Source: Octopus sinensis
Taxonomy: Eukaryota
DNA: 64,000 bases
Assembly: GCF_006345805.1 (NCBI RefSeq)
Contig: NC_043014.1
Location: 16,430,001 to 16,494,000, forward strand
Reading direction: 5' to 3'
In this document: piece by piece, positions 1-64,000 of the stretch
Layout: every line of letters starts with the position of its first letter
Position numbering within the stretch: the first letter of the stretch is position 1
Position numbers and translations under genes: made by a program
Notes under the pieces: model-generated
The model's input: only the letters and a program-made list of their open reading frames with translations
What the model was told of the DNA's origin: nothing
Databases searched by the model: none

Positions 1-43
1 TCTTTGATGTTTCCAAAGTTCTGCTGTGGCCATCTCCTTCAAT
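1..43 (-). CDS. Candidate internal exon (start only) of the unidentified minus-strand gene; runs off the window
   Basis: Minus strand reads ttttgttattccag|a ttg aag gag atg gcc aca gca gaa ctt tgg aaa cat caa aga (LKEMATAELWKHQR). The phase-2 start matches the phase-2 end of the 6533-7259 exon. Confidence 0.4.
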   Translation of the reverse strand, partial: MEGDGHSRTLETSK

Positions 44-940
44 CTGGAATAACAAAAGTTGGCTTGTTAGGTGTACGATAATAAGACAGAACACAAAATT
101 TATTCAGCTGTGACATGCAAAAAGAAAAAAAAAAAAAGAGATGTTTAATGGTTTTGCTGTGATTAGCACAAATTGTATTCCATAAAAAGCTTCCAAACCT
201 CACAGCTACATTCTGCAAACTCAGCAACCAAGACAAGCAGTGTTTATAGCAGGATGTTTCCAAATTGCTGTTACAGCTGCCTTCTTCAATCTGGAACAAC
301 AAAAGTTGGCAGGTCAGCTTTATTAAATGTACGATAATGAAATTCCAATAATTTAGGACAGTTAGAATGCAAAACTCCATTGTGTGGTGACCTTCCAAAT
401 TCTCTTCACATCCTGATTTCATTCTACAAACCAGTCAACTGTAACAAACAGTGTTTTGTAGGATGGGTTCAAAGTGCTCTAATAGCTGTCTCCTTTAACC
501 CTTTCGTTACCAACCCGGCTGAAACCGGCTCTGGCTCTGAGTACAAATTTCTTGTTTCCATAAGTTTTGAATTAAAATCTTCTATCAAACCTCAGTCACA
601 ATTTATGTTCCTAACAGTAGCTGAATGATAACTAAGTTATTTTGCTAAATTCTTTGTTATATTTAGAATAATTGAAAGAAACACAGAGCATCTCAAAATA
701 AATACAGTAATGAAAGGGCTAATATGGAACAACAAAAGTTGGCAGGTCAGCTTATTAGATGTATGATAATGAAATACTGAAATTACAATAATTTAGGACA
801 GTTACAAGCAAGCTTCCTACTTGTCTTCACATCACAATTACATTCTACAGATTGGTTAACTGTAACAAAGTGTTTCAGTTGGGTCTGTCAGAAAGTTGTT
901 TCAGCCATCTGGAACAACAAAAGTTGGCAGGTCAGCCTAT
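44..940 (-). repeat. Four diverged copies of a 3' splice-site cassette (branch point, pyrimidine tract, CAG)
   Basis: Plus-strand ctggaa(c/t)aacaaaagttggc(aggtcag) occurs at about 44, 291, 724 and 909. On the minus strand it reads ctgacctgccaacttttgttgttccag; the copy at 44 lacks the ctgac part. Confidence 0.7.
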
Positions 941-1239
941 TAGCTGTGTAGTAAAATGACTAAGGTCAGTTATAAAAGTCCCCAAACTTCTGCAAACTAC
1001 CATGGGCAGGCATTCTACTATACTTTAGACCTCAAGTGGCCTGAACTATTTACATGAACACCACCCTGTACATAACTCCATGTCCCCCTACATGGCCTTG
1101 CTTTTTGCTTTTCGAGCCAAAAAATTAACTAACTAACTAGATCTAATGTATGGTATAGCTGTGATTAATATTACTGGTTATAGTTGTTGTTGTTGTTGTT
1201 GCTGATATCTAGATATTTGAGAACAATAAGCAGTCTTAG

Positions 1240-1420
1240 GTAAAATGCTTAGAAGTATTTTGCCTGTCTCTACGTTCTAAGTTCAAACTCTGCTGAGGTC
1301 ATCTTTGCCTTTCATCCTTTCAGGTTTGATAAATTTAAGTACCAGTGAAACACTGGGGTCGATGTGATCAATCAGTCCCCTCTCCCAAAATTTCAGGCCT
1401 TGTGCCTACAGTAGAAAGGA
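1240..1420 (+). mobile_element. SINE family B (tRNA-derived), degenerate copy
   Basis: gttcaaactc B-box-like motif, ctttgcctttcatcctttc core and aagtaccag...ggggtcgatgt, as in the intact copy at 55781. Confidence 0.7.
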
Positions 1421-1421
1421 T

Positions 1422-1800
1422 TACTCTTTTACTCTTTTACTTGTTTCAGTCATTTGACTGCGGCCATGCTGGAGCACCGCCTTTAGTCGAGCAAATCGAC
1501 CCCGGGACTTATTCTTTGTAAGCCCAGTACTTATTCTATCGGTCTCTTTTGCTGAACCGCGAAGTGACGGCGACGTAAACACACCAGCATCGGTTGTCAA
1601 GCAATGCTAGGGGGACAAACACATAAACGCATATATACGACGGGCTTCTTTCAGTTTCCGTCTACCAAATCCACTCACAAGGCATTGGTCGGCCCGAGGC
1701 TATAGCAGAAGACACTTGCCCAAGATGCCACGCAGTGGGACTGAACCCAGAACCATGTGGTTGGTTAGCAAGCTACTTACCACACAGCCACTCCTGTGCC
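1422..1800 (-). mobile_element. SINE family A (tRNA-derived), near full length
   Basis: Reverse complement of the 18845 copy: A box tggctgtgtgg, B box gggttcagtccc, 3' tail gtcaaatgactgaaacaag(taaaagag)n. Confidence 0.85.
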
Positions 1801-1951
1801 TATAGTTATTATTATTTTTATTTTTAAGCTGTATCTGCATCTATAGTTTGTTATTGGTGTTTTTTGTTTTAATTTTTGCTTTTAAATGATTTCTTTTTGT
1901 CCTTCATCAGCTAAAATATCTAATCATTCCTCCTTTTTCTATTCTTTCCAG

Positions 1952-3904
1952 GTAATGGAGGCTGGCAAGACGACCCTACCCAAGTGGTTGTATTTCGACG
2001 TTGAGACTCGTACCTTCTCTGGAGTCCCGAAACCAGCAGACATCGCCCAGTATTACATCGAGGTTGTGGCGCAGGCTGAGGACCAAGGAGCTGTTAGTCA
2101 GTTCGCCAAAGATGTCTTCTCGATTCATGTGACCAAAGAAAGCTCGAAACCCGCCACAATGGCGGCAGCAGCAACAGCAATCAGTGGTTCATCATCAAAG
2201 AAGAACAGCAAAGGTTCAAATTTTCCACCAGTCATCCGATGCATGACCCAGGAGCCAGAGACTGCATTTACGCTAATTGTTGATGCAGACCTTGATCAAC
2301 TTCCTCCCCACGGCATTGTGGGACTGTTAAAGAAACTGGAGCACAATCTGGAGCTTGTGTCTGAGATGTTTAAGGTCGGTCCTGCCACCACTGGCAACAG
2401 GCCCATCCCTCCTGTCCATGCAGTCACCCCAGACACATCGTCCTCATCTACCCTTGTATCAGGGCCCGGTGACACAAAAATCGCAAAACACCCCGGGGTG
2501 CTTGTCACATGGCTGGTTGGTTGTGGCCGAGTGGAGCTGCAGCACATGAACGTTCTACAGAGGGTGGAATCAATTTCAGCAAATGGCACCTTGTCCGGGC
2601 TCCTCGGTCATGGAGTTGTAGGGTGGCATGTGACAAACAGACAAGTAACCCTGCCTGAGAAGAGGGTAAGGCGTGCAGCCATCATGGCCACACCGGCTGT
2701 CACTGACATTGCACCGACGCGCACCCACCTGCATTCACACAAGACCCACCACCGACATACAGATGGAATGGCCATCAGCATGCCCGAATATTGCAGTCGC
2801 GCAAGAAAGCTAAAACCACGAATAGCACACAGGATTCCTGTACAGGAATTCGAGGCCGGGAAGCGAGCCTACTTCTCTGTGCCATCTGACACGTTCATTG
2901 ACTGCAAGGATCCCAGCGACCGCTTGACGCTGGCATTTTTCCTTAAGCAACTCCCTCCCAACATTTGGCTGCAGCGAGACCCGGCCAATAACAAGAGTAT
3001 AATTGGGCTGCCAATGGAAAGCAATGTGGGCATCCTCAACGTGACAGTGGTGGCGATAAACAGTGATGGAATGTTCAACAACATGGACTTCCTCGTGAAG
3101 GTTCTGAAGAACAAGAACCTCAAGAGCAACAAGGTAACCCACAAGATCAAGATGAAGTTCAGTATGGAGTACAAGAAGTTCATGTCAAACCTCGACTCGA
3201 GGCTCGATCTCATTGACAAGATCGGCAAATTGTACGGAGACGCAGATGCGAGCAGCGTCACAGTGCTCGAAATAACAGAGGGGTCCGTGGAGGTGTCGTG
3301 GACAAACAACACTCTCGTCGGCACAAAATGCCCCGATGATGCTACCAAAGCCCTTTTTGAACGCCTAGTTGATGACAAAAAGCGGGTGAAACGTTCAGCA
3401 AGGAAAGCAATGAAACCTTTCAAGCTGCAATCGGCCCAAATAATCCCGATGGGAGCTTGTGCTGGGGTCTATATCAACCCAATGCCGAGCACCACAATGG
3501 TAGCATCAACAACACCAGAACTCAATATCAACCCAATGCCGAGCACCACAATGGCAGCAGCAACAACACCAGAACTCAATATCAACCCAATGCCGAGCAC
3601 CACAATGGTAGCATCAACAACACCAGAACTCAATATCAACCCAATGCCGAGTACCACAATGGCAGCAACAACAACACCAGAACTCAAGAAACCACAGTCT
3701 GATGATGAGAACGATATTCCTATTTCAACCATTGTCCTTGATATCACCATCGTGTCCATATTGCTTCTGGCCCTGCTCATTACTTGCATCCGTTACCGAA
3801 AGAATCGGAGAGGAATGATGTCGCTCTCGTCTGCCGGCGAGGGCACCCAGTCGACCCCGACCCAGACCGAAGAAGAGGTGGGCCTTGCAGCGACGGTGGA
3901 GTAA
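1952..3904 (+). CDS. DAG1: Dystroglycan-like protein, large terminal coding exon (ectodomain and TM intact, cytoplasmic tail truncated)
   Basis: Acceptor tctattctttccag| at 1951 gives VMEAGKTTLPKWL, matching the start of the DAG1 large exon (VSAAGKEALPSWL). Present: cadherin-like domain, paired N-terminal Cys, furin site RVRR (2663-2674), second cadherin-like domain, SEA domain with EG/SVEVSWTNNTL cleavage site (3281-3286), two beta-ectodomain Cys, TM followed by RYRKNRRG. The upstream signal-peptide exon is not seen in the window. Confidence 0.88.
   Translation, partial: VMEAGKTTLPKWLYFDVETRTFSGVPKPADIAQYYIEVVAQAEDQGAVSQFAKDVFSIHVTKESSKPATMAAAATAISGSSSKKNSKGSNFPPVIRCMTQEPETAFTLIVDADLDQLPPHGIVGLLKKLEHNLELVSEMFKVGPATTGNRPIPPVHAVTPDTSSSSTLVSGPGDTKIAKHPGVLVTWLVGCGRVELQHMNVLQRVESISANGTLSGLLGHGVVGWHVTNRQVTLPEKRVRRAAIMATPAVTDIAPTRTHLHSHKTHHRHTDGMAISMPEYCSRARKLKPRIAHRIPVQEFEAGKRAYFSVPSDTFIDCKDPSDRLTLAFFLKQLPPNIWLQRDPANNKSIIGLPMESNVGILNVTVVAINSDGMFNNMDFLVKVLKNKNLKSNKVTHKIKMKFSMEYKKFMSNLDSRLDLIDKIGKLYGDADASSVTVLEITEGSVEVSWTNNTLVGTKCPDDATKALFERLVDDKKRVKRSARKAMKPFKLQSAQIIPMGACAGVYINPMPSTTMVASTTPELNINPMPSTTMAAATTPELNINPMPSTTMVASTTPELNINPMPSTTMAATTTPELKKPQSDDENDIPISTIVLDITIVSILLLALLITCIRYRKNRRGMMSLSSAGEGTQSTPTQTEEEVGLAATVE
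3471..3686 (+). repeat. In-frame 54-bp x4 tandem repeat encoding (INPMPSTTMxAxTTPELN)4
   Basis: Exact period of 54 (3471, 3525, 3579, 3633); units alternate VAS and AA(A/T). Confidence 0.97.
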
Positions 3905-4032
3905 ACGAACCCATACTCGGCTCGCAACCGTATGAGCCACCACCTCCTGTCACTGCGTCGCAGGGCAAGAAACAGCCGCGCCCCCACGTGCAACCCCCCT
4001 AAAGATCACCTCCTCCATATGTGCCTCCATAA
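3895..4032 (+). pseudogene. DAG1: Stranded dystroglycan C-terminal tail (out of frame, with an in-frame TAA)
   Basis: A different frame reads PYEPPPPVTASQGKKQPRPHVQPP*RSPPPYVPP*. TAA at 4000-4002 sits where the canonical tail (…PYRSPPPYVPP) has Tyr; the final stop is at 4030-4032. Confidence 0.9.
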
Positions 4033-4338
4033 GTTCATTGCTGAAGTGTAATTATATATATAACTGTATGTATATATATATGTATGTATACTTATACATA
4101 TATAACGTATGTGTGTGTGTGTATATATTATATACACTTGTGTTCTATTCACTCTATATTTATTTATATACATGAATATATATGTATATATATATTTATA
4201 TATATATCACAAATATATATTATATGTATATATATATACACACACACATATACATATGTATATACATACATATATCACACATTTGTAATATGCGTGTGTA
4301 TACACGCATATTTACACACTAAACACGCATACATTATG

Positions 4339-4375
<37 letters not shown>

Positions 4376-4604
4376 TTTATGTAAAGCTCTACCACTGTTC
4401 AATCAACCAAAAATACAAACTAATAAACCAAACAAAGGCCCTTTGCCCTGTCCTCCTGCTCCAGAGGCCCCTACCCAATGCTCTCCCCCCTTCTTTATAA
4501 AAACAACAAAAAAAAACATTGACAAAAACAAACAAAAAACATTGACAAAAAATCAAAGCAAAAAAATGAACAATAACATCAACATTTTAGAAATGTAACA
4601 GTTT

Positions 4605-4691
4605 ATACAATTATACAAGATACACATGTATATATATACACACAAACACACATCTACATGTATATATATATCTATATATATATATCTTATG

Positions 4692-4735
<44 letters not shown>

Positions 4736-4882
4736 CTGTGTACATGACTATAAATGTGTGTTGTGTGTGTGTATAGAAGGATATTTGTATATACATGAGA
4801 ACTTTTATGCGTAATATATACATGTGAATATATAGACATATGCAAATATATGTGTGAGTGTTTGTACATATATATATATGTG

Positions 4883-4923
<41 letters not shown>

Positions 4924-6334
4924 TGCCTAATCATTTGATTAGAAAACTTACAGTTCAAAAACAGTAAAGAACTCAATACTATTTTAAAGTGTCTACTGTC
5001 TGTATATATATATGTGTGTGTCTGTGTTTGTCCTCCTAGCATTGCTTGACAACCGATGCTGGTGTGTTTACATGCCCGTCACTTAGTGGTTCGGCAAAAG
5101 AGACCGATAGGATAAGTACTGGGCTTACAAAGAATAAGTCCCGGGGTCAATTTGCTCGACTAAAGGCGGTGCTCCAGCATGGCCGCAGTCAAATGACCGA
5201 AACAATTAAAAGAGTAAAGAGTAAATTGAGCTCAAAATTAGCATGGAATCAGCATATTCTGAATTTTGTTTATTCCCTCTCTCTGTTTTAATGTATAGAG
5301 AGGGAGGTCCAAGTTTTACCTAGTGGATATTCTTGTACATGTAAATTTCATTTTTCTTTGAAGAATATTGGCCAAATTTCACCAATAAAAATCATATTAT
5401 GCAATGGATTTTATTTTGTAGACTATTAAAGTCCGATGTGATGTTTTTTTTCTCCCCAATTTTAAATATAGTCAGATAATCTGTAGTAGTGTTTATATTT
5501 TCACAAGTAGGTCTGATTTGTTTGGGGTTTTTCTCTCACACCTACAAACAAGTTTGCTGCAAGTTACAGATGTTTTTAATGCTAAAAACAAGAAATTAGC
5601 TTTCACATTTTGTTTTTTTTTAATCTAAGTCTACATGCAATTTTGAGAAAAGTAGTAGGTGGTTGTGGGATGTGCTAGGAACAACAGCTAAATCTCCCTT
5701 TAATCACATCCTTTCGTTTGAAAATATTTTCAATCCTCCCCCCACCCCACAAGTCTTCTCCCATTGTTTTTAAAGGCTTAGTTTTAAAAAAAGCCAAAAT
5801 TGGTCCAGGAAGGTGAAGGGGGAGATCATAAATTTTCAAAAGTTTTTTTCATAAAAAGCTTCCCACCATTATTTCCAAGGTTGTGATGAAAAAAAAAAGG
5901 AAAAATCCTCATCAAAATGGAGAAAATCCAACTTATGTGGGCATCCTGATCCAAAACTCTACTGTTTATAGCCATTTTTAATTGTCCATTAAAATTTAAT
6001 TGAAGTAGTATCATGTTCCAAAATCTCGGGATTCATTTAGTTCTATACCTACCACAAATGTGCCCCTTCTGGATTGAACTTTGGGATTTAATAAGGTCTG
6101 AAAACCTCATGAAATCAGCTGGTTGTTACATGCAAAAAAATAGGCTTTACGTAAATATTTTTAAAAACTGCTGAAACAAAAATTTCATTATCAAGAACTA
6201 GCAAATAAAAAGAAAAAAGGCAACTGCTATGCCATGGACACTATTAATTTGTATATGATTATCACCTCAGTTTCAAAGATATGACATTACAAATATGGCT
6301 AATTATTCATTTAGACTTAATTGGGCAAGATTTC
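4605..6334 (+). repeat. Left arm of a large inverted duplication
   Basis: Reverse complement of 7311-9593, e.g. ttgggcaagatttc (ends 6334) vs gaaatcttgcccaa (starts 7311). The MTTDAGVFT ORFs at 5046+ and 8601- are near identical. This arm lacks about 370 bp including the SINE head. Confidence 0.95.
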
Positions 6335-6532
6335 AACCAATTTGACATATTTCCTCAAATATTCATCTAAATTTCACAAATGTTTCTTTGGATGTTCTCC
6401 AAAGAAAGGTACGGTGGAAGTTAGATTTACATATTTTCAAAAATTCATAGTGATGCCTACTACAAAAGTTAGGAAACAATTTTGTTAAAGCAAGTCAAAG
6501 CACAATAATACAAATATAAAAGCAGGACTCAC

Positions 6533-7259
6533 ATTTTTATAGCAGTATCCATTCTACCTAAATTTTCTTTGGGATAATCTGTCAATTTACTTCCATCAGC
6601 ATCTCCAAGTCCAACATTATGTCCCTGTCTCGCCATCATGTTTTCTGTTGATGGTGAAGAGACCATCATGGAGGGTGATGACACCAACATTTTATTTGAT
6701 AAAGCCACATCTTCTGGTGACATACGTGAGTCTTTTGGATAGAACAATTCATTGGAGATAGAATCCACTATTCCATTTTGATTCAGTACCTGACTTTCTA
6801 AAGAGCGTGACAACATCTTATCATAGGATCCAACAAAAGCATCTTTATATATTAAATTGTCATTCTGGTTTGACCCCTTTCCTGACGAATCTTGATTTTC
6901 ATATTTAATCATCTGAGGATCAATAAGGCTAGATGTGAGTGAATATTGCTTAGCATTCGGTAAAAGAGCTTTATTTGACTCTTCATCAAGGTCCATCATT
7001 TTCTGATTATGGTTATCTGATGGCAGAGAGTGTCTTCTGTCTATAAGTGTTTCATAATTAGGCCGGTTAGTCAATACTTGATGGTTGTCACTGTTAACTG
7101 AATGCACCTGATCAGAACCTGATTCATATGTAGCACGAACAGAACCTAGGTACTGGTGGTGTTGAGCATTATCTGTAAGAGAGTGATGCTTACGGTCCTG
7201 CACCCCATCATTGTAACTAGAATGGTTATCTAACAACTGATGTCCCGAGGGTTGGTGAT
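6533..7259 (-). CDS. Internal coding exon (727 bp, phase 1 to 2) of an unidentified minus-strand gene; low-complexity S/N/D/Q/H-rich peptide
   Basis: A stop-free 251-codon frame in very AT-rich DNA, bounded by acceptor atattgatag|atcacc (7260) and donor aaaaat|gtgagt (6532). Confidence 0.75.
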
Positions 7260-7310
7260 CTATCAATATTATAATTATGAACATTATTATTATTACGCTT
7301 TTTTTTTAAA

Positions 7311-9593
<2,283 letters not shown>

Positions 9594-10059
9594 GGACTTA
9601 TCCCCATTGACTTTTTTATCCAAATAAAGCAAAAAAAAAAAAGTTCTCTTAATGGCTTTCATTCTCAACACAAATCGAGTTATAGGGCTCTAGTACAGTC
9701 GAAAACAAAAAAATGGGACAAACTGTGAATGGGTGGAAATATGAGTGTGATGGAGGGAATCTGACATGATAAGTAAGTGTTGGATTTTAATCAAAAGTAT
9801 AAGAGAAGAAAGTTCACATCTATAACTTTCAAGTAATATATAATTGTCTGTGGAAAGAATGCATTTTGATGTGAAAATAGTCAAGCAAAAAGTGGGCTTT
9901 TGCTTGGTCAAATTATGCTTGTCTCCCTTTTATGAAGCCCTTTAGTGATACCTATTTATTGACAGAAGTATTGAACGTGAGCTTAGTTATGCAATATCCG
10001 AAACAGAAAAGACCGATAAAAGAAGCTCACTTTTTTGTGTACTTTTGTAAATAGTAGGG

Positions 10060-10318
10060 TACTGCCAGTCTCGCCTGGCCCCTGTGCTGGTGGCACGTAA
10101 AGAGCACCATCCGACCGTGGTCGTTTGCCAGCCCCGTCTGGCACGTAAAAAGCACCCACTACACTCATGGAGTGGTTGGCGTTAGGAAGGGCATCCAGCC
10201 ATAGAAACATTGCCAGATCAGACTGGGCCTGGTGCAGCCTTCTGGCTTCCCAGACCCCAGTTGAACCGTCCAACACATGCTAGCATGGAAAACGGACGCT
10301 AAATGATGATGATGATGT
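10060..10318 (+). mobile_element. RTE-type 3' end repeat (family C)
   Basis: ggttggcgttaggaagggcatccagc core and aaacggacgctaaat(gat)n tail, the same family as 39500, 57100 and 59440. Confidence 0.75.
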
Positions 10319-10590
10319 ATATATATATATATATATATATGTCTGTATATATGCATATGTGTGTGTGTATTATGTATATATGTATGTATACATATATATG
10401 TATATATATATATGAATGTATATATATATATATATGTATATATATGTGTGTGTATACATATATATATATGTATGTATATATATGTGTATGTATATATATA
10501 TGTATAAATAAATGTGTGTATATATATATGTATAAATAAATGTATGTATATATCTATATGTGTAAATAAATGTATGTATATATGTATGTG

Positions 10591-10621
<31 letters not shown>

Positions 10622-10925
10622 GTATGTATATATATATATATGTATATATATATGTATGTATATATATATGTATATATATATATGTATGTATATATGTATA
10701 TATATGTATGTATATATATATATGTATATATATATGTATATATATGTATATATATATATGTATATATATATATGTATGTATATATGTATATATATATATG
10801 TATGTATATATATATATGTATGTATATATATATGTATGTATATATATATGTATGTATATATGTATGTATATGTATATATATATGTATGTATATATGTATG
10901 TATGTATATGTATGTACATATGTAT
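10318..10925. repeat. (TA)n/(TATG)n compound microsatellite
   Basis: Direct inspection. Similar tracts lie at about 4060-4370, 9070-9350, 11145-11375, 14726-15446, 16620-17340, 21085-21545 and 22010-22243. Confidence 0.98.
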
Positions 10926-11026
10926 ATAACGGGAAGCTTTATGAAAATAAACAAAAGACGAAGGCAGGTGGAAAACAAACGAACAATTGTATTAGTATGG
11001 CGCTCAGGAAATATAAATAAAACAAG

Positions 11027-11064
11027 TCTTTAACGTTTCGAGCCTACGCTCTTCAACAGAAAGA
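11027..11064 (-). ncRNA. Minimal type-I hammerhead-like motif (family H2) in a short Penelope-like repeat (about 10926-11130)
   Basis: Minus strand: TCTTT-CTGTTGA-A-GAGC(GTAG)GCTC-GAAAC-GT-T-AAAGA, giving stem I, core, stem II, palindromic stem III and a GUU site. Confidence 0.6.
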
Positions 11065-11265
11065 TACAGAGAGAGAGAAAAACACAGAAAGAAGGGGAGA
11101 AAAAAAATACGTGCAGTAGCTAACGAATCAACATGGCGATCTGTATATATGTATATATATGTATGTATGTATATATATATGTATGTATATATGTATGTAT
11201 ATATATATGTATGTATATATATATGTATGTATATATATGTATATATATATGTATATATATATATG

Positions 11266-11297
<32 letters not shown>

Positions 11298-11303
11298 CGT
11301 ATG

Positions 11304-11343
<40 letters not shown>

Positions 11344-11635
11344 TGTTTGTTTATATATGTATGTATATATATTTATAGATCAATAAATGGTGGGGTTGTG
11401 TTGACCGCACGTGGAGAAATGATAAGCAAGGAAAAATTGTAAAAATGTAGAATGCTCAAATGAAAGAAAATTTTAATGAAATGAGAAATTGATAAAATAT
11501 ATAAATATATATTTATTCAAACCAGTTTTCGTCATTGTATGACTTGTCAAGAATATTTAGGTTAAAAAAGTTTTTTAAAAATTAGAAAGGGGAAAAAAGA
11601 AAATTGCATTGTTTTTTGCAAAAGAATAATAATAG

Positions 11636-14600: not shown

Positions 14601-14725
14601 TGTGCAGGCGTTAGTGGAGGCCATCCCGTGTCTGTTGACTGCGGTGGTCTTGCATAGTGGTGGGCAGGGTTCCTTCTCTGTGCTTGCTGTAGCCAGGTTA
14701 GCTGCCGGACAATTCTTTGTGCCAT
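11636..14725 (-). mobile_element. Near full-length CR1-group LINE ORF2 (APE endonuclease + RT), inactivated
   Basis: EN motifs ALVETHL, GGVAVY, MGDFNF, SDHN; RT motifs YRPISLTS, LDFAKAFDKVDH, GVPQGTVLGP, YADD; C-terminal PDEP. One frame is broken by three in-frame stops (13455, 12141, 11754). Confidence 0.93.
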
Positions 14726-14756
14726 ATGTATATGTATATATGTATGTATGTATGTG

Positions 14757-14813
<57 letters not shown>

Positions 14814-14826
14814 ATGTATGTATGTG

Positions 14827-14868
<42 letters not shown>

Positions 14869-15404
14869 TGTATGTGTATATATATATGTATGTGTATATA
14901 TGTATGTATGTGTATATATGTATGTATATATATGTATATATGTATGTATATATATTTATATATGTATGTATATATATGTATATATATATATATATAGATA
15001 TATATGTATTTATGTATATATGTATATATATATATATGTATATATTTATGTATATGTATGTATATATATATATGTATGTATGTATATATATATGTATGTA
15101 TGTATATATGTATGTATATATATGTATGTATGTATATATATATGTATGTATATATGAATATATATATAGGTATGTATATATATATATGTAATGTATGTAT
15201 ATATATATGTATGTATATATATATATATGTATGTATATATGTATATATAATATATATATATATGTATGTATATATGTGTATATATATATATGTATGTATA
15301 TATGTGTGTATATATATATATATGTATGTATATATGTGTATATATATATATGTATGTATATATAAGTTTATATATATATATGTATATATATGTATGTATG
15401 TATA

Positions 15405-15446
<42 letters not shown>

Positions 15447-16066
15447 GAAAAGGGAGGAGCCATGGTGGAGTTGCAATGTACATCCGTGATGACCTCACAC
15501 CCCAAGTCCTGTTGTCATATTCAAACTCAGTGTGTGACACTCAAATTGTACACATAAGACAACTGAATATCGTCATATGCACTACATATCGCCCAACAGA
15601 TGCCCCAAATCACCCAGGCATGTTTGAAGACCTCCTAACAAAAATAGGAGAAGTCCTCACCAACCTTGAACAACACAACATTGTATTCTTCATAGGTGAC
15701 TTTAACTTCCCCAATGTGGAATGGCCTGGGGGGGCAGATGCTCTCAGGGATGACACATCATCAGCAGGCACAGGCAGTGTCCCTGCTCCATCTCACAAAT
15801 GCCTCTTTCATGGAGCAAATAGTTCTGTAACCAACAAGGGCAGATAATATACTGTATCTCTGCTTCACAAACAATATGGATATTATCCATAATGTTAAAG
15901 TGATGCCGACAATGATCTCAGATCACAACATAATAGAGCTGTCTATGTATGGACCAAAAGCCCCCGTAGACACACAGCCTATACGAAGCATCCACCATCT
16001 CTCCAACTTAAACTTTCATAAAGCAAACTGGAAGTTGATTGAGAAAGAGATCCTCAAATGGGATTG
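15447..16066 (+). mobile_element. APE endonuclease fragment of the same CR1-group LINE family
   Basis: [19 protein letters not shown]…[10 protein letters not shown]…SDHNIIELSMYGPK closely parallels the 13455-14570 protein. Confidence 0.88.
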
Positions 16067-20742: not shown

Positions 20743-21099
20743 TACACAGAAAAGAAACAAGGAGAGAAAAAAATTACGTGTAGGGGCTAATATGTATAGT
20801 TATATTTTTCTTACAAAAGATACAGACAGCATAGAAGTGCTGAAGTCAAGCCTGAGACATTAGACAATTATAATAAATGGAATGGAGAAAGCTCAAATCA
20901 TTTAAACCACAACGAACACACATGTATATGGGTATAATTATATATATGTGTGCTAATTTACAGACACACACCCGGGCAAATACTTAAACACACAGACACA
21001 CACGTGTGTGAGTTGATGCATGGAAGTATATAAAAAAAAAGCTATAAGACATTAAAACAATGGAATCTAAGGCCTGACAGTTCTGTGTGTGTGTGTATG

Positions 21100-21137
<38 letters not shown>

Positions 21138-21156
21138 CATACATATATATATATAC

Positions 21157-21212
<56 letters not shown>

Positions 21213-21265
21213 TATATACATATACATATACATATATATATATATACATATATATACATATATAC

Positions 21266-57817: not shown

Positions 57818-58073
57818 ATCTTTCGTCTCTAGTAGACCTTTCCGTCGATTTCCGTAAAAAAATATTTTTTTTACATATGGGCTTGCGGGAACTTTTGAAG
57901 TAATGAGAGCGAAAGAAACTAAGAGAAAGCGATTGTATGACGAGGGAAGTTCTTTTGAAGTTACCGTGCATGGGAGCATTGATGTACATGTGTGTGTGTG
58001 TGTGTTTGATGGGGCGTGGGAGACATACAGTATGTTGTGTAATCGACGGAAAGGTCTACTAGAGACGAAAGAT
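57818..58073. mobile_element. MITE-like element with perfect 33-bp inverted repeats
   Basis: atctttcgtctctagtagacctttccgtcgatt (57818-57850) and its exact reverse complement (58041-58073); no TSD seen. Confidence 0.7.
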
Positions 58074-58138
58074 CACCCATGTAGGTATGTGTGTGTGTGT
58101 GTCTCTATCTATATATATATATATATATATATATCTCC

Positions 58139-58182
<44 letters not shown>

Positions 58183-58184
58183 GG

Positions 58185-58229
<45 letters not shown>

Positions 58230-59067
58230 AACACTTAGTATAAGTGACGTTGAATCATTATATTTTCCCTTACTCAGAGAAAGCCTAAATAAATAATATA
58301 ACCTAAGAGAAAGCTTAAGGTAGAATAAACAGAAAACCGCGACTGATGTAGCAATAGCCATTTTAGCCATTTTGAAATGTGGCGCGAATTGGCACTATGA
58401 CGTAATGTCTTTGCTGAAGGATTATCATTTTAGTTTTATTCCATTGGTTAATATAACTTGCTCATATATATTTCGTCGGGCGAAATGCGTAGCCGTATTT
58501 CGTCTGCCGTTACGTTCTGAGTTCAAATTCCGTCGAGGTCGACTTTGCCTTTCATCCTTTCGGGGTCGATAAATTAAGTACCAGTTACGCACTGGGTCGA
58601 TGTAATCGACTTAATCCCTTTGTCTGTCCTTGTTTGTCCCCTCTGTGTTTAGCCCCTTGTGGGTAGTAAAGAAATATCTATAAAGATTCTAGAAGTTTCG
58701 AAAAGAATATCTGTCATGAATTTCGATTCTTTTAGAATCTTTATATAAGCAAGTTATATTAACCAATGGAAATAGGAATTACAAACATGCTTTCTTGCAG
58801 CTCCGAGGGTTTTTAATTCTTATTTCTAGCGATATAGGTGCTACTCGCCCCCCCCCCCTCGGTTACCTGCACTTTGAATGGATATATATATATATATACA
58901 TACATACATATACACACACACACTGGTATGTGTATGTGTACATAGACCTATATAGACACAACCTGCCACTCCCCCCTATTAGAACCTGACTGTATTGCTT
59001 AATACACAGGGGACAGGCACCTCCCCCTCACCCACCACCTCCAACCCCCACCTACCCCACCCACTCT

Positions 59068-59114
<47 letters not shown>

Positions 59115-59181
59115 ACCTATTACAGGTTCAGCCTCTTTGTTTTATTAGCATCCGTATGTTGTTAACGTGTTTATATATATT

Positions 59182-59615
59182 GTGCCGGTGGCACATAAAA
59201 AGCACCATCCGAACGTGGTCGTTGCCAGTGCCGCCTTGACTGGCTTCTGTGCCGGTGGCACATAAAAAGCACCGTCCGAACGTGGCCGATGCCAGCGCCG
59301 CCTTGGCTGGCTTCTGTGCCGGTGGCACATAAAAAGCACCGTCCGAACGTGGCCGATGCCAGCGACCCCTTGGCTGGCTTCGGTGCCGGTGGCACGTTAA
59401 AAGCACCAACCGATCGTGGCCGATGCCAGACTCCCCTGGCACGTAAAAAGCACCCACTACACTCGCGGAGTGGTTGGCGTTAGGAAGGGCATCAAGCTGT
59501 AGAAATACTGCCAGATCAGACTAGAACCTGATGCAGCTCCTGGCTTCCCAGACCCCGGTCGAACCGTCCAACCCGTGCTAGCGCGGAAAACGGACGTTAA
59601 ACGATGATGATGATA
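59182..59615 (+). mobile_element. Family C RTE-type 3' end with a 67-bp x about 4 tandem array
   Basis: Units start at 59182, 59249, 59316 and 59383, each opening with a GTGCC-GGT-GGCAC hairpin; (gat)n tail. Confidence 0.85.
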
Positions 59616-59809
59616 TATATATAGTGTGTGCGTGTATACACACTCATCTTTCTACAGTTTCTACACACCATTAACCAGCTTCCTTGGCACAGTTCCACAC
59701 TGGCCTCCATGCCCTTTCACCCTTTCCTATTTGTCTGTCTGTGTGTCCTCCTCCCGATTGTGTTTCTATTTGCTTCTGTGCGCATGTGTGTGTAACTATG
59801 CCCCCACCC

Positions 59810-59930
<121 letters not shown>

Positions 59931-60076
59931 GTATATATATACATGTACGCACACACTCACCAACATTGTTCTGGAAGTTGAGGCCAAATCTTCTACACCT
60001 TAGTTGCATATAAAGTGTATGTGTGTGTGTGTGTTGTATATATGTATGTATAAGTATAAGCATACACAAGACGCTT

Positions 60077-60102
<26 letters not shown>

Positions 60103-60107
<5 letters not shown>

Positions 60108-60329
60108 CTTTATTTTAAGCAGCAGAAAATTCAACAAAATCTGTTACTCTGAGTTTCTCGTTGCCGTTCATCAGACAGTTTTTGCTAGAATGGAACTTAT
60201 ATATTAATTCAATCTTAGATTGAATTAATATATAAGTTCCATTCTAGCAAAAACTGTCTGATGAACGGCAACGAGAAACTCAGTGTAACAGATTTTGTTG
60301 AATTTTCTGCTGCTTAAAATAAAGCATAT
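60103..60329. ncRNA. 227-bp near-perfect palindrome with two hammerhead-like motifs (family H1; 60141-60178 minus, 60254-60291 plus)
   Basis: Centre at 60216 (1-nt spacer). The minus arm reads CTGT-CTGATGA-ACG(GCAA)CGA-GAAAC-TCAGA-GT-A-ACAG. Confidence 0.65.
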
Positions 60330-60419
60330 TACTCTACCACTGGTATTTGAGTACTCTTTTTTCCACCTTGTTTCACATTTATGTGTTTACTCCGGTATAT
60401 ATATATATATACATATATA

Positions 60420-61155
60420 TACTCTTTACTCTTTTACTTGTTTCAGTCATTTGACTGCGGCCATGCTGGAGCACCGCCTTTAGTCGAGCAAATCGACCCT
60501 GGGACTTATTCTATCGGTCTCTTTTGCTGAACCGCTAAGTGACGGGGACGTAAACACACCAGCATCGGTTGTCAAGCAATGCTAGGGGGACAAACACAGA
60601 CACACAAACATATATACAACAGGCTTCTTTCAGTTTCTGTCTACCAAATCCACTCACAAGGTTTTGGTCGGCCCGAGGCTATAGCAGAAGATACTTGCCC
60701 AAGATGCCACGCAGTGAGACTGAACCTGGAACCATATGGTTGGTAAGCAAGCTAGTTACCACACAGCCACTCATATATATATATATACACACACATATAT
60801 AGTGGCTGTGTGGTAAGTAGCTTGCTTCCCAACCACTTGGTTCTGGGTTCAGTTCCACTGCTGGGCACCTTGAGCAAGAGTCCTCTACTATAGCCTTGGA
60901 CCGACCAAAGCCTTGTAAGTGGATTTGGTAGACAGAAACTGAAAGAAGCCTGTTGTATATATATATATGTTTGTGTGTGTGTGTGTGTGTCGCTTGACAA
61001 CCAATGTTGGTGTGTTTACGTTGCTGTAACTTAGCGGTTTGGCAAAAGGGTTTGATAGAATTAGTACTAGGCCAAAGAATATGTCCTGGAGTCAATTCGT
61101 TTGACTAAAGGCGGTGCTCCAGCATGGCTGCAGTCAGATGACTGAAGTAAAAGAG
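60420..61155. mobile_element. Head-to-head pair of SINE family A copies
   Basis: Minus copy at about 60420-60770 and plus copy at about 60800-61155, with about 30 bp between the heads. Confidence 0.85.
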
Positions 61156-61720
61156 TGTGTGTGAGATTATATACACACACACACACACACACATCATCTT
61201 GTCAGTTTTCCATGCTGGCATGAGTTGAATGGTTTGACAGGATCCAGCAAGACTGTACTGAGTCCCCCTCCCATTGTGGCCTGGTTTCTACGCTTGGAAG
61301 CCCTTCCTAATGACAACCACCTCACACAGTGACACTGGGTGCTCATTTTTTTTCTCGCACTAGTGAGATGACCCGAATAAGCTGCAAGATGTGGAAGATA
61401 AAGAAGGGTGGAAGGGTGCCTTTGCACCCTGTGCTGGAAGCCTAAAGGGTGTTAGGGAGGCTGCCCCCAAGGCAGTGAGCTGGCAGAAACGTTAGCAAGC
61501 CGGGCGAAATGCGTAGCCGTATTTCGTCTGCCATTACGTTCTGAGTTCAAATTCTGCCAAGGTTGACCTTGCCTTTTATCCATTCGGGGTCGATAAATTA
61601 AGTACCAGTTACGCACTGGCGTCGATATAATCGACTTGATCCATTTGTCTGTCCTTGTTTGTCCCTTCTGTGTTTAGCCCCTTGTGGGTAGTAAAGAAAT
61701 AGGTATATACATACATACAG

Positions 61721-61757
<37 letters not shown>

Positions 61758-61982
61758 GCTCACAAGGCTTTGGTCAGCCTGAGGCTATAGTAGAAGGTGC
61801 TTGCCCAAGGTACCATTCAGAGGGACTAAACCCAGAACCATGTGGTTGGGAAGCAAGCTTCTGACCACACAGCCCCCTTTATGGCACCTTTGGCAAATGT
61901 CTTCTAGTATAGCCTCAGGCCCACCAAGTCCTTGTGAGTGGGTACAGTAGATGGAAACTGAGAGAAGCTCACTGTTTCTATA

Positions 61983-62015
<33 letters not shown>

Positions 62016-63019
62016 GGAGAGAGAGAGAAAAAGTCATCAGAATTTCGTGAAAAAAATGTTTCTATTTCTTCATTATTATGACTGGTTTCAAAGTCACTGT
62101 TCTTCATCAGTCTGGAATATATATGTATGTATACACATACATATATATGTGTGTGCATGTATGTATGTGTGTATAAACACACAGGCTTTTGTGTTGGAAC
62201 AAGAATTAAGTTCTCAAAGACTGTTGGATTAAAATTCATGCAAAATGCATCACATACATTTGTGTATATATATGTATATACATATACTTATGTGTGTGTG
62301 TGTATGTACTTGTTTGTGTGTGTATGTACTTGTTTGTTTGTGTATAAATATATATATGTCTATGCACATATGTATATATATATATATATAGGAGTATACA
62401 TAAATATGTAATAATTCGTGTGTGTGTGTATATATATATGTTGTATGCATATAGTTGTTTAGATTCTGTGTAGGTTATGTTATAATGTTGATTACGGAAA
62501 ATTGGGCGTTATATATTTGCTATTGGAGAAAGCAACATCTAATTTGAAAATAATGAAAGAATTGTCGATACATACACATGTACATATTACATTCATATTA
62601 ATGCTTACATGTGTATAAATGTATGTATATATCATAATTTAATGTCCTTTCCATGTTGGCATTGGTTGGACTGTTTGGCAAGAACAGAGAAGCTGGAGGG
62701 CTGTTTTGGCATGGTGTCTACAGCTGGGTGCCCTTCCAAACATCCTTCCATCCTGAATAGAATGTACTGGGCACTTTCTGCTTGGCCACAGCACTGGTGT
62801 ATTCAGTTCCTTACCCAGAAGATAAGGCCCTTCAACAATGCAATGTTAAGGACTGGCAGAAGACACAATGAAAGATGGGGATGAGGAGCTGCTGTTCTAG
62901 AATTTTTAGCTTCAAGGAATATGTTCTGCTAGTGGTTACCATCTTTCCTTTTAATTCACTTTCAGACACCAGCTAACCACCACGGGCCTTTTGTGGCACT
63001 TGATCATTCTTAATGATAA

Positions 63020-63665
63020 GCGCAGGGGTGGCTCTGTGCTATGAAGCATTCTCACCCACATGGTTCCAGGTTCAGTCCCACTGCATGGCATCTTGGGCAA
63101 ATGTCTCCTACTATAAGCCTCAGACTGACAGGTGGCAAGCTGGCAGAAACGTTAGCGCACCAGGCGAAATGCTTCATCTGTCTTTACGTTCTGAGTTCAA
63201 ATTCCGCCAAGGTCGACTTTGCCTTTCATCCTTTCGGGGTCGATTAAATAAGTACCAGTTTCACACTGGGGTTAATATAATTGACTTAATCGCTTTGTCT
63301 GTCCTTGTTTGTCCCCTCTGTGTTTAGCCCCTTGTGAGCAGTAAAGAAATATATAAGCCTCAGGCTGACCAAAGCCTTGTGAATGGATTTGGTAGACAGA
63401 AACTGAAAGAATCCCATCATATATATGTGTATTTATTTATTTATGTGTGTCTTTTTGTCTGTGTTTGTCCCTCACCATCACTTTGACAACCAGTGTTGGT
63501 GTGTTTACATCCCTATAACTTATCGGTTTGGCAAAAGAGATTGATGGAATAAGTGCCAAGTTTGCAGAGTACAAGTCCTGGGGTTGATTTAATTCAAATA
63601 AAGATTCTTTGAGGTGGTGCTCCAGCATGGCTGCAGTCAAATGACTGAAACAAGTAAAAGAATAC
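63020..63665 (+). mobile_element. SINE A with a SINE B (63130-63351) nested inside
   Basis: An 18-bp TSD tataagcctcag(a/g)ctgac at 63112-63129 and 63352-63369. Confidence 0.9.
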
Positions 63666-64000
63666 ATCATTGTCATCATCCAACATTCCTTTTCCCTTGC
63701 CGGCATGGGTTGGACGGTTTGACAAGATCATGTGACTCAGAGGGCTCTGCCAGGTTCTATGTCTACCTTGGCAAGGTCTCTGCAACTTGTTACCATTCCT
63801 ATCACTGGACACTCTTCTACATGGTGCACCTGCCCCAGTGAGGTCACCATGTACTGGCAAAATAAGACCAACCACTCTTGTTTTCATCATTGTTGAACGT
63901 CCCATGTTCCATGCTGGCATGGATGGGGCTAGGATTTCGCAGAATCAAATGGGTCCCAAGACAGCATTGTCCTCAAGGGTCTGCTTTTGGGATGCCCTTT

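What the first reader, a model, noticed from the sequence alone, without database searches (positions are those of the whole stretch)
1952..4032. Dystroglycan copy with an intact ectodomain but a dismantled cytoplasmic tail
Seen: about 650 codons with no stop or frameshift cover both cadherin-like domains, the furin site, SEA G/S site, cysteines and TM. The tail ends at …GLAATVE*, the conserved KGVPIIFADEL…PPPEY segment is absent, and the rest of the tail lies in another frame with Tyr changed to TAA just before RSPPPYVPP. Established: the C-terminal PPxY motif of beta-dystroglycan binds dystrophin/utrophin WW domains. Inference: three lesions concentrated in about 200 bp against a clean 1.9-kb ectodomain suggest a paralogue uncoupled from the cytoskeleton (decoy or adhesion-only receptor), although a young pseudogene is possible.
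Basis: partly seen in the sequence, partly recalled or inferred. Interest (0 to 1): 0.75.

Follow-up and report, generated by a model that had tools for sequence, protein, structure and literature searches.

The report
Tail-less dystroglycan gene copies in octopus
This is the main coding exon of one of at least four tandem octopus copies of the matrix receptor dystroglycan. All copies lost the tail that binds dystrophin before they multiplied and have kept open reading frames since, so they may be natural "uncoupled" receptors, though a young pseudogene family is not excluded.

Summary
Window 1952-3904 is the large 3' coding exon of Octopus sinensis LOC118767037 (100% match, chr CM016876.1). 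It has 650 open codons and stops 37 residues after the membrane helix.

It is not a lone damaged copy. Eight copies (4 O. sinensis, 4 O. vulgaris, tandem 78-kb units) share these changes relative to canonical dystroglycan, which is intact on another chromosome:
- A 144-nt in-frame tail deletion.
- A 1-nt deletion that causes the frameshift.
- Three in-frame ectodomain deletions (84 codons, mostly mucin-like region).
- An expanded 18-codon stalk repeat.

The Tyr-to-TAA change lies in what was already 3'UTR and is shared by 3 of 8 copies. The old tail drifts freely (12 non-synonymous/stop changes against 2 synonymous). Assembly error is excluded.

Whether the family still functions is unsettled.
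- For function: no premature stop (3.4-4.3 expected under neutrality) and one frameshift (about 9 expected) in eight copies. N/S ratios also differ between domains (p about 0.01).
- Against: omega is 0.71 (not distinguishable from 1), the exon evolves as fast as its flanks, and changes are radical and do not avoid conserved sites.

I favour a still-coding, fast-evolving, cytoskeleton-uncoupled family (about 0.6) over pseudogenes (about 0.33). No publication describing it was found.

The parts
1927..1951 (+). 3' end of the conserved IG1 intron: polypyrimidine tract and AG acceptor
   Evidence: Sequence. The same TTCTTTCCAG|GT junction is present in all 11 octopus dystroglycan loci. The IG1 intron is universal in dystroglycan genes (PMC5216574).
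1952..3904 (+). Last coding exon of LOC118767037: 650 codons plus TAA. It encodes the end of IG1, the S6-like domain, the furin site, a mucin stub, IG2, the maturation module, a repeat stalk, the membrane helix and a 37-residue tail.
   Evidence: ORF. Identical to the C-terminal 650 residues of XP_036366871.1 (P0014). Window 1-13904 matches L005 at 100%. Pfam hits: He_PIG, a_DG1_N2, and DAG1 profile positions 3-129 of 290 only.
2663..2674 (+). Furin site RVRR, followed by the MATPAVT threonine pair region
   Evidence: Invariant in all 8 paralogues and 3 canonical genes.
2712..2768 (+). Remnant of the mucin-like region between two in-frame deletion junctions: a 90-nt deletion at about 2712/2713 and a 153-nt deletion at about 2767/2768
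   Evidence: DNA alignment and protein alignment. Both deletions are shared by all 8 paralogues. The first is flanked by the 6-nt direct repeat ACCGAC in the canonical sequence.
2944..2945 (+). Junction of a 9-nt in-frame deletion in IG2 (canonical FFLDDYKQ became FFLKQ)
   Evidence: Shared by all 8 paralogues.
3281..3286 (+). [quoted passage not shown]
   Evidence: Invariant in all copies.
3471..3687 (+). Tandem repeat of a 54-nt (18-codon) Thr/Ser/Pro-rich unit (INPMPSTTMxAxTTPELN), 4.0 copies, just outside the membrane. The canonical gene has one unit.
   Evidence: TRF. Copy number varies from 2 to 5 among paralogues, always in whole units.
3722..3790 (+). Membrane-spanning segment ISTIVLDITIVSILLLALLITCI
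   Evidence: Aligned to the canonical helix. This segment and its surroundings are the fastest-changing part: N:S is 25:5 in the clade and 7:0 on the stem.
3791..3904 (+). Short new cytoplasmic tail RYRKNRRGMMSLSSAGEGTQSTPTQTEEEVGLAATVE plus the TAA stop
   Evidence: The same ...TEEEVG(L/I)A(A/E)TVE* end is found in 7 of 8 paralogues.
3833..3834 (+). Junction of the 144-nt in-frame deletion that removed EHDAYSGKGAPVIFAEELEDKPTDCQRPLILDDEKPPHPPPEYQHSS. Its placement is ambiguous within about 7 nt.
   Evidence: Flanked by the 7-nt direct repeat CCAGCGA in the canonical gene. Shared by all 8 paralogues.
3864..3865 (+). Site of the 1-nt deletion (canonical CCAGGACCG) that shifts the frame
   Evidence: Shared by all 8 paralogues in two species.
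3905..4032 (+). Former C-terminal tail, now 3'UTR. It is readable in the old frame from 3865. TAA at 4000-4002 replaces Tyr, the relic PPPY is at 4009-4020, and the old stop is at 4030-4032.
   Evidence: Within the family there are 12 non-synonymous or stop changes against 2 synonymous in the old frame. The TAA is shared with Ovul P0011 and P0013. Canonical genes show 11 differences, all synonymous.
57927..64000 (+). Start of the next 78.4-kb tandem unit: the upstream region of the neighbouring paralogue LOC118767040
   Evidence: Window 57927-64000 matches L001 1-6074 at 100%. From about 58168 it is 93-95% identical to the upstream region of the window gene itself.

Best explanation
**What it is (shown).** The interval is the 3' coding exon of LOC118767037, one member of a lineage-specific dystroglycan-derived gene family.

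**History (shown).**
- The whole canonical dystroglycan locus was copied at the DNA level to another chromosome. The copy included at least 8 kb upstream, both coding exons, the IG1 intron and about 1.2 kb of 3' flank.
- Synonymous distances place this after the split from O. bimaculoides.
- The founder copy then lost 81 codons of the mucin-like region, 3 codons of IG2 and 48 codons of the cytoplasmic domain. All four deletions were in frame, and at least two were flanked by short direct repeats.
- The founder also took a 1-nt deletion that ends translation 37 residues after the membrane helix.
- Only afterwards was the about 78-kb unit amplified in tandem. There are at least 4 copies each in O. 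sinensis and O. vulgaris, three of them recognisable orthologue pairs.
- The last 55 codons, including PPxY, became 3'UTR and now drift.

**Function (inferred).**
- The copies still encode a secreted, furin- and Gly|Ser-processed type I membrane glycoprotein.
- It has a dystroglycan-like ectodomain, a shortened mucin region, a variable 18-residue repeat stalk and a minimal tail.
- It cannot bind dystrophin/utrophin or other tail partners.
- It would therefore act at the cell surface uncoupled from the cytoskeleton, either organising or competing for matrix ligands.
- It evolves fast, under relaxed or diversifying selection.
For: **Identity and family**
- Window matches L005 at 100%.
- Eight paralogues and their names are; their chromosomal positions are.
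- The canonical loci are elsewhere.
- The tandem unit is 78.4 kb.
- Paralogue and canonical loci are colinear, including upstream DNA and the intron.

**Shared lesions**
- All four deletions and the 1-nt deletion are in every copy.
- The old tail is unconstrained: 12 N/stop against 2 S, with TAA in 3 of 8 copies. Canonical genes show 11 differences, all synonymous.

**Timing**
- dS paralogue-canonical is 0.17-0.18, below the 0.32 for O. bimaculoides-canonical.

**Signs that it is still coding**
- All 8 last exons are open for 615-669 codons, and exon 1 with its signal peptide is open in the 7 copies covered.
- Under neutrality 3.4-4.3 nonsense events are expected in the clade (P of zero = 0.014-0.035), or 4.7-6.1 with the stem.
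- The adjoining intron has 9 non-microsatellite disabling indels in 1794 columns. The coding part has 1 frameshift in about 1900 nt, located after the membrane helix (binomial p = 0.008; combined p about 0.001-0.003).
- 7 of 9 non-unit indels in the exon are multiples of 3, against 5 of 19 in the intron (Fisher p = 0.017).
- N:S differs by domain (chi-square p = 0.012, Monte Carlo p = 0.008). IG1, the mucin stub and the maturation module together give 10:13, against 38:9 for IG2 plus the membrane region.
- The furin site, Gly|Ser site and all Cys are kept in 8 of 8 copies.
Against: **No detectable constraint on the amino-acid sequence within the family**
- My own branch codon model gives omega 0.71 for the paralogue clade and 0.98 for its stem. 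Omega = 1 is not rejected (2dlnL = 2.8, p about 0.09). Canonical omega is 0.12.
- Changes fall evenly on codon positions: 29/44/41.
- Non-synonymous changes are more radical than random mutation. Mean BLOSUM62 is -0.85 against -0.31 expected.
- They hit positions invariant in five canonical cephalopod dystroglycans as often as chance predicts: 36 of 64, with 34 expected.
- The exon diverges at least as fast as its intron and 3' flank, also when CpG sites are excluded.

**Weaknesses of the ORF argument**
- The copies were found through a protein database, so disrupted copies would have been missed.
- O. vulgaris spacings of 80, 122 and 157 kb leave room for unannotated units.

**Missing evidence**
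- No transcript or protein evidence could be obtained.
Confidence: 0.6

Rival explanations
1. A family of young, non-functional segmental duplicates (unprocessed pseudogenes). The founder lost function when its mucin region and tail were deleted. The units were amplified as neutral DNA, and the open frames persist only because the copies are young and because only intact ones were annotated.
For: - Omega is 0.71 in the clade and 0.98 on the stem, not different from 1.
- Codon-position spectrum is uniform, and amino-acid changes are radical.
- Deeply conserved positions are not avoided.
- Exon divergence equals or exceeds flank divergence.
- All known cytoplasmic docking motifs and two thirds of the mucin-like region are lost.
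- One copy (Ovul P0013) has a further frameshift.
- No expression evidence was found.
Against: - Zero nonsense mutations where 3.4-6.1 are expected.
- One frameshift where about 9 disabling indels are expected from the adjoining intron.
- Strong in-frame bias of exon indels, including all four large founder deletions.
- N:S heterogeneity between domains, which a uniform neutral process does not predict.
- The four O. sinensis copies sit in consecutive units, and the window shows no hidden copy between two of them. Ascertainment is therefore limited there.
- Three orthologue pairs are retained intact in both species.
Confidence: 0.33
2. The full tail is still made. A small intron, programmed frameshift or RNA editing restores the old frame, so the PPxY motif is expressed.
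For: - A GT (3878) ... AG (3936) pair 59 nt apart would join the two frames (read).
- Five of 8 copies keep TAC instead of TAA.
- One NCBI model (XP_036366867.1, 'LOW QUALITY PROTEIN') reads into the old frame.
Against: - In the old frame the segment evolves without coding constraint (12 N/stop against 2 S) and has a stop in 3 of 8 copies. It is invariant at the protein level in three canonical genes.
- The putative acceptor has no pyrimidine tract.
- Three O. sinensis RefSeq models (P0001, P0002, P0014) and three of four O. vulgaris models (P0010-P0012) end at ...TVE*; the fourth, P0013, ends in a third frame.
- The low-quality model is an imposed frame correction. The native frame of that exon is open to the same TVE* stop.
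Confidence: 0.02
3. The frameshift and the TAA are sequencing or assembly errors in an otherwise normal dystroglycan gene.
For: The 1-nt deletion lies in a short G run and the TAA follows a C6 run, which are contexts prone to long-read errors.
Against: - The same 1-nt deletion and 144-nt deletion occur in all eight copies, in two species assembled independently.
- The TAA is identical in the O. vulgaris orthologue and in a third copy.
- The normal gene exists separately on another chromosome.
Confidence: 0.01

Closest known systems
Canonical dystroglycan (DAG1/Dg) of Octopus sinensis, O. vulgaris and O. bimaculoides
   Same: - Same two-coding-exon gene structure with the IG1 intron.
- Same signal peptide, IG1, S6-like domain, RVRR furin site, IG2, Gly|Ser maturation site, two beta-ectodomain Cys and single membrane helix.
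- About 91-94% nucleotide identity in the exon.
   Different: - Lacks 81 of about 125 mucin-like residues and 3 IG2 residues.
- Has 2-5 stalk repeats instead of 1.
- Lacks the whole conserved cytoplasmic domain, including both PPxY motifs.
- Multi-copy in tandem on a different chromosome.
- Omega about 0.7 against 0.12.
DAG1a/DAG1b paralogue pairs of teleost fish and lamprey (PMC4582122, PMC5216574)
   Same: These are the only previously described cases of more than one dystroglycan gene in a genome.
   Different: - Those arose by ancient duplication and keep the full domain set, including the dystrophin-binding site.
- They are single extra copies.
- The octopus family is recent, tandem, at least 4-fold and truncated.
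Dystroglycans of Trichoplax and urochordates that lack a conserved dystrophin-binding site (PMC4582122)
   Same: Natural dystroglycans without the C-terminal PPxY site.
   Different: In those lineages it is the only dystroglycan and the rest of the cytoplasmic domain is present. Here a complete canonical gene coexists with the tail-less copies.
Engineered beta-dystroglycan lacking the cytoplasmic domain, and mucin-less splice isoforms of Drosophila Dg (recalled from my own knowledge, not checked here)
   Same: Same idea of an ectodomain anchored in the membrane without a link to dystrophin, or with a shortened glycan-bearing region.
   Different: Those are laboratory constructs or splice variants of the single gene. 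Here the state is hard-wired in separate genes. The resemblance is a lead only.

Membership tests
Dystroglycan (DAG1) family | Significant sequence homology to dystroglycan over the ectodomain (Pfam DAG1, a_DG1_N2, He_PIG) | tested here: met
   All three Pfam families score above their curated cut-offs in P0014. Identity to canonical octopus dystroglycan is 72% over 97% of the query.
Dystroglycan (DAG1) family | Gene structure: ATG exon, IG1 intron, one large 3' exon | tested here: met
   Exon 1 is at L005 10001-10462 and the last exon at 22582-24534, with the same acceptor as the canonical genes. This matches the conserved structure in PMC5216574.
Dystroglycan (DAG1) family | [quoted passage not shown] | tested here: met
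   All are present and aligned in all 8 paralogues. Actual processing was not tested.
Dystroglycan (DAG1) family | Central mucin-like region carrying the O-mannosyl glycans that bind laminin | tested here: inconclusive
   Only about 44 of about 125 residues remain. The Thr pair region after the furin site (MATPAVT) is kept. Glycosylation cannot be tested with these tools.
Dystroglycan (DAG1) family | Conserved cytoplasmic domain of about 120 residues | tested here: not met
   The tail is 37 residues. The DAG1 profile matches only positions 3-129 of 290, against 3-290 in the canonical protein. The cause is the 144-nt deletion plus the frameshift.
Dystroglycan (DAG1) family | C-terminal dystrophin-binding site (PPxY within the last 15 residues) | tested here: not met
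   The motif lies out of frame in the 3'UTR, behind a stop. It evolves without coding constraint and is preceded by TAA in 3 of 8 copies.
Unprocessed pseudogene | Disabling mutations (premature stops, frameshifts, lost splice sites) within the region homologous to the parent coding sequence | tested here: inconclusive
   There is one frameshift that truncates only the tail. There is no stop or frameshift in 615-669 codons of any of 8 copies, and splice acceptor and exon 1 are intact.
Unprocessed pseudogene | Neutral substitution pattern (omega about 1, no codon-position bias, rate equal to flanks) | tested here: inconclusive
   Omega is 0.71, not significantly below 1. Codon positions are uniform and the exon rate equals the flank rate. 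However, N:S is heterogeneous between domains (p about 0.01).
Unprocessed pseudogene | No expression of a protein product | not testable with these tools
   No transcript or proteome data were reachable. The locus identifiers are absent from the searched literature and from the held supplements.

The most novel reading that the evidence does not exclude
The tail-less copies are a new, rapidly diversifying family of cell-surface dystroglycan decoys or recognition molecules. Selection would keep the frame open while favouring amino-acid change in IG2, the stalk and the membrane-proximal region, and variation in stalk length. This could serve, for example, to intercept pathogens or ligands that use dystroglycan, or to tune matrix assembly without engaging the dystrophin complex.
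Probability: 0.2. Interest if true: 0.75.

Novelty: new variant of a known kind. Interest (0 to 1): 0.5.

Why it matters
- Dystroglycan is treated as a single-copy gene in invertebrates. Its transmembrane and cytoplasmic parts, including the dystrophin-binding site, are described as its most conserved region (PMC4582122).
- A recent tandem family that removes exactly that region, while keeping the processed ectodomain open in eight copies across two species, would be a natural separation-of-function experiment. It would show what the extracellular half does when uncoupled from the cytoskeleton.
- It would also be another lineage-specific surface-protein expansion in octopus.
- If the copies prove to be pseudogenes, the locus is still a well-dated example of how a segmental duplicate decays. 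Automatic annotations currently call these copies 'dystroglycan 1-like', and one model is force-corrected into the old frame, so they need care.

Tried and rejected
1. My first two fits of the branch codon model had not converged and gave contradictory likelihood ratios (24 and 1.4). A tighter run timed out. Only the coordinate-wise fit is used.
2. Nei-Gojobori omega for orthologue pairs (0.46-0.72) rests on 2-8 changes per class. It is too little to test.
3. A 59-nt GT...AG mini-intron (3878-3936) that would rejoin the frames was rejected. It has no pyrimidine tract, the downstream old frame is unconstrained, and a stop is present in 3 of 8 copies.
4. Rooting the duplication with decapodiform proteins gave 2:1:1 informative sites, which is undecided. 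The timing rests on synonymous distances only.
5. A second dystroglycan exon in the window: none found.
6. Expression evidence:
   - The three locus identifiers occur in no searchable paper.
   - They are not in the supplements of an O. sinensis gonad transcriptome.
   - They are not in the O. vulgaris brain cell atlas marker tables, which were cut when stored.
   - One preprint had no held supplements.
   - Absence from these sources is uninformative.
7. A protein search of transcriptome-derived (Logan) sequences returned no octopus dystroglycan at all, canonical included. It cannot speak to expression.
8. Comparing the exon rate with flanks as a constraint test showed no reduction.
Full report
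**1. What is at 1952-4032**

The region is eukaryotic. A polypyrimidine tract and AG end at 1951, and an open frame runs from 1952 to a TAA at 3902-3904. Its 650-residue translation matches octopus dystroglycans at E = 0. It is identical to the C-terminal 650 residues of XP_036366871.1, 'uncharacterized protein LOC118767037 [Octopus sinensis]' (P0014).

Window 1-13904 is 100% identical to L005 20631-34534. The window therefore starts at about position 16,430,001 of O. sinensis chromosome CM016876.1.

- RVRR at 2663-2674.
- Gly|Ser at 3281-3286.
- The conserved cysteines.
- The membrane helix at 3722-3790.
- The end ...GLAATVE*.
- In the other frame...NEPILGSQPYEPPPPVTASQGKKQPRPHVQPP*RSPPPYVPP*, with TAA at 4000-4002 in place of Tyr.

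Pfam finds He_PIG, a_DG1_N2 and DAG1. The DAG1 profile is matched only over positions 3-129 of 290, whereas canonical octopus dystroglycan matches 3-290.

**2. It is one of a family, and the lesions are ancestral**

The protein database holds four such proteins from O. sinensis (P0001, P0002, P0003, P0014), all on CM016876.1 between 16.26 and 16.52 Mb. It holds four from O. vulgaris (P0010-P0013) on OX597833.1 between 22.86 and 23.23 Mb.

The canonical, full-length dystroglycan lies on a different chromosome in each species (CM016885.1 and OX597842.1). O. bimaculoides contributes one canonical gene.

A DNA alignment of the last exons and a protein alignment of all eleven show that every paralogue shares the following relative to the canonical gene:
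- In-frame deletions of 90 and 153 nt in the mucin-like region.
- A 9-nt deletion in IG2.
- Expansion of a 54-nt repeat to 2-5 units.
- A 144-nt in-frame deletion removing ...GKGAPVIFAEEL...PPPEY....
- A 1-nt deletion (CCAGGACCG to CCAGACCG, window 3864/3865) that leads to ...TVE*.

At least two of the deletions are flanked by short direct repeats in the canonical sequence (ACCGAC and CCAGCGA). This is the usual footprint of slippage.

The two coding lesions of the tail therefore happened once, in the founder. The TAA at 4000-4002 is shared by the window copy, its O. vulgaris orthologue P0011 and P0013. The other five copies keep TAC.

In the old frame the ex-tail has collected 12 non-synonymous or stop changes against 2 synonymous within the family. 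The same 168 nt differ between O. sinensis and O. bimaculoides canonical genes at 11 sites, all synonymous. The PPxY segment is thus untranslated DNA drifting after the truncation.

Assembly error is excluded, because the lesions recur in eight copies and two independent assemblies.

**3. How the family arose**

- The paralogue unit is colinear with the canonical locus from at least 8 kb upstream of exon 1, through exon 1, the IG1 intron and the last exon, to about 1.2 kb beyond the old stop. Non-coding identity is 85-94%. This was a DNA-level duplication of the whole gene including its upstream region, not a retrocopy.
- Exon 1, with start codon and signal peptide, is open in all seven copies for which it is covered.
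- Units repeat every 78.4 kb. Window 57,927-64,000 is already the upstream region of the next copy, LOC118767040. No other dystroglycan exon lies in between.
- Neighbour-joining groups the eight paralogues as one clade with three clear O. sinensis/O. vulgaris orthologue pairs.
- Synonymous distance is 0.17-0.18 between paralogues and canonical genes, and 0.03-0.05 among paralogues. Orthologue pairs differ by 0.005-0.013, and O. bimaculoides-canonical by 0.32.
- The order of events is therefore: split from O. bimaculoides, duplication, truncation, tandem amplification, then the O. sinensis/O. vulgaris split. That split is estimated at about 2.5 Myr in PMC10700109.
- An attempt to confirm the root with decapodiform proteins was undecided.

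**4. Functional gene or pseudogene?**

*Evidence for selection*

- All eight last exons are open for 615-669 codons in their native frame. This includes the copy that NCBI flags 'LOW QUALITY'.
- From the observed substitutions and the mutation spectrum, 3.4-4.3 nonsense mutations are expected in the clade under neutrality (P of none = 0.014-0.035). With the stem, 4.7-6.1 are expected.
- The intron next to the exon carries 9 disabling, non-microsatellite indels in 1794 aligned columns among the same eight copies. The coding part has a single 1-nt deletion, in O. vulgaris P0013, just after the membrane helix. The binomial p is 0.008. Combined with the stop test, p is about 0.001-0.003.
- Of nine exon indels that are not whole repeat units, seven are multiples of three. 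In the intron the figure is 5 of 19 (p = 0.017).
- The N:S ratio is heterogeneous between domains (chi-square p = 0.012; Monte Carlo p = 0.008).

| Region | N:S in the clade |
|---|---|
| IG1, mucin stub and maturation module together | 10:13 |
| IG2 | 13:4 |
| Stalk end, helix and juxtamembrane | 25:5 (plus 7:0 on the stem) |

*Evidence for neutrality*

- My branch codon model (kappa 4.2) gives omega 0.12 for canonical branches, 0.98 for the paralogue stem and 0.71 for the paralogue clade. Omega = 1 is not rejected (2dlnL = 2.8), while omega = 0.3 is rejected (19.3).
- Changes fall evenly on codon positions: 29/44/41.
- Amino-acid replacements are more radical than random mutation (mean BLOSUM62 -0.85 against -0.31).
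- Replacements hit positions invariant in five canonical cephalopod dystroglycans as often as chance predicts (36 of 64, 34 expected).
- The exon diverges as fast as or faster than its flanks, also outside CpG sites.

*Caveat on the ORF tests*

The copies were found through a protein database. Spacings of 80, 122 and 157 kb in O. vulgaris could hide unannotated, possibly broken, units. In O. sinensis the four copies occupy consecutive units.

*Verdict*

The frame is being kept, but the ancestral dystroglycan constraints on the sequence are largely gone. I read this as a still-coding family under relaxed or diversifying selection (about 0.6), with a young pseudogene family as the serious rival (about 0.33).

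**5. Likely mechanism if functional (inference)**

The product would enter the secretory pathway and be cut at RVRR and at Gly|Ser like dystroglycan. It would sit in the membrane with a short acidic tail (RYRKNRRG...TEEEVGLAATVE).

It lacks every known cytoplasmic docking element of beta-dystroglycan (established knowledge; the conserved block and both PPxY motifs are gone). It therefore cannot recruit dystrophin or utrophin.

With most of the mucin-like region removed but the Thr pair after the furin site retained, its capacity to carry laminin-binding glycan is uncertain.

It could organise or compete for extracellular ligands without transmitting force. The variable stalk and fast-changing IG2 and membrane-proximal parts would suit a decoy or recognition role.

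**6. Comparison with what is known**

Two surveys of dystroglycan evolution report the following:
- Most species have a single gene.
- Paralogues occur only in teleosts and lamprey.
- O. bimaculoides has one gene, with a 2310-nt last exon. This matches my L011 extraction.
- The dystrophin-binding site is conserved in all phyla except Placozoa and urochordates.

Neither survey, nor any paper searchable by locus identifier, mentions tail-less octopus copies. The gene models exist in public annotation only as 'uncharacterized protein' or 'dystroglycan 1-like'.

The copy meets the homology, gene-structure and ectodomain criteria of the family. It fails the two cytoplasmic criteria. I file it as a truncated derivative of dystroglycan, not as a dystroglycan in the functional sense.

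**7. Scores**

Novelty is 'new variant of a known kind'. Interest is 0.5. The structure and history are solid and unexpected for this gene, but function is unproven and the sequence evolves almost neutrally.

Noticed in passing
window 1421-1804: A SINE-like element of about 380 nt sits in the IG1 intron just upstream of the exon. It has many 80-93% identical copies on both strands in every octopus locus fetched. One paralogue (L001) lacks a 461-nt block here.
   Followed up: partly
window 6529-7284 (-): A 251-codon ORF without any Pfam match. The homologous position in sister units carries small annotated genes of 146-182 residues (L002 14557-15027, L007 26747-27368, L009 27139-27760). It is therefore co-amplified with the dystroglycan copies. 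It was not seen in the 10 kb downstream of the canonical gene.
   Followed up: partly
window 12141-14570 (-), 29848-31845 (-), 48354-52127 (+): Non-LTR retrotransposon remains fill much of the inter-copy space. They include adjacent endonuclease and reverse-transcriptase ORFs (371 and 433 codons) and tandemly repeated RT/zf-RVT fragments.
   Followed up: partly
window 33972-35018 (-): A 348-codon low-complexity ORF with His-rich, Ser-rich, poly-Glu and Arg-rich stretches and no Pfam match. It may be an exon of an unannotated gene or may be chance.
   Followed up: no
L010 and L004 about 10514-10954 (canonical exon 1) versus L005 10001-10462 and L011 9989-10315: Just after the signal peptide, the paralogues and O. 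bimaculoides share ...ERDVGAPP.AP.AASMQLKLNDIQ. The canonical genes of O. sinensis and O. vulgaris have a different, shorter segment there. The paralogues seem to preserve the ancestral N-terminus that the canonical gene later changed.
   Followed up: no
last exons of L010/L004 versus L005/L006, L002/L007, L003/L008: Synonymous divergence between O. sinensis and O. vulgaris is 0.044 for the canonical gene but only 0.005-0.013 for the three paralogue orthologue pairs. Locus-wide mismatch is similar, at 2.1% against 1.6%. This is unexplained. Possible causes are regional rate differences, gene conversion or chance.
   Followed up: partly
L003 28395-30529 (XP_036366867.1, 'LOW QUALITY PROTEIN: dystroglycan-like'): The RefSeq model is frame-corrected so that it reads into the old PPxY tail, and it passes through an out-of-frame stretch around the repeats. 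In its native frame the exon is open for 669 codons to the same ...TVE* stop as its sisters. This looks like an annotation artefact.
   Followed up: yes
L001 (LOC118767040), membrane-helix region of the last exon: This copy has the longest terminal branch (0.073 against 0.003-0.02 for most others, with P0013 at 0.053). It has a cluster of replacements in and around the helix: ISINVLCITYVFILLL and YLKSRRRK.
   Followed up: no
window 4040-4380, 4600-5040, 9050-10980, 14580-15850, 21000-21690: Long (TA)n/(TG)n/(CA)n-type microsatellite tracts produce spurious 'YIYIYI' ORFs on both strands. They account for most indels in the 3' flank.
   Followed up: no
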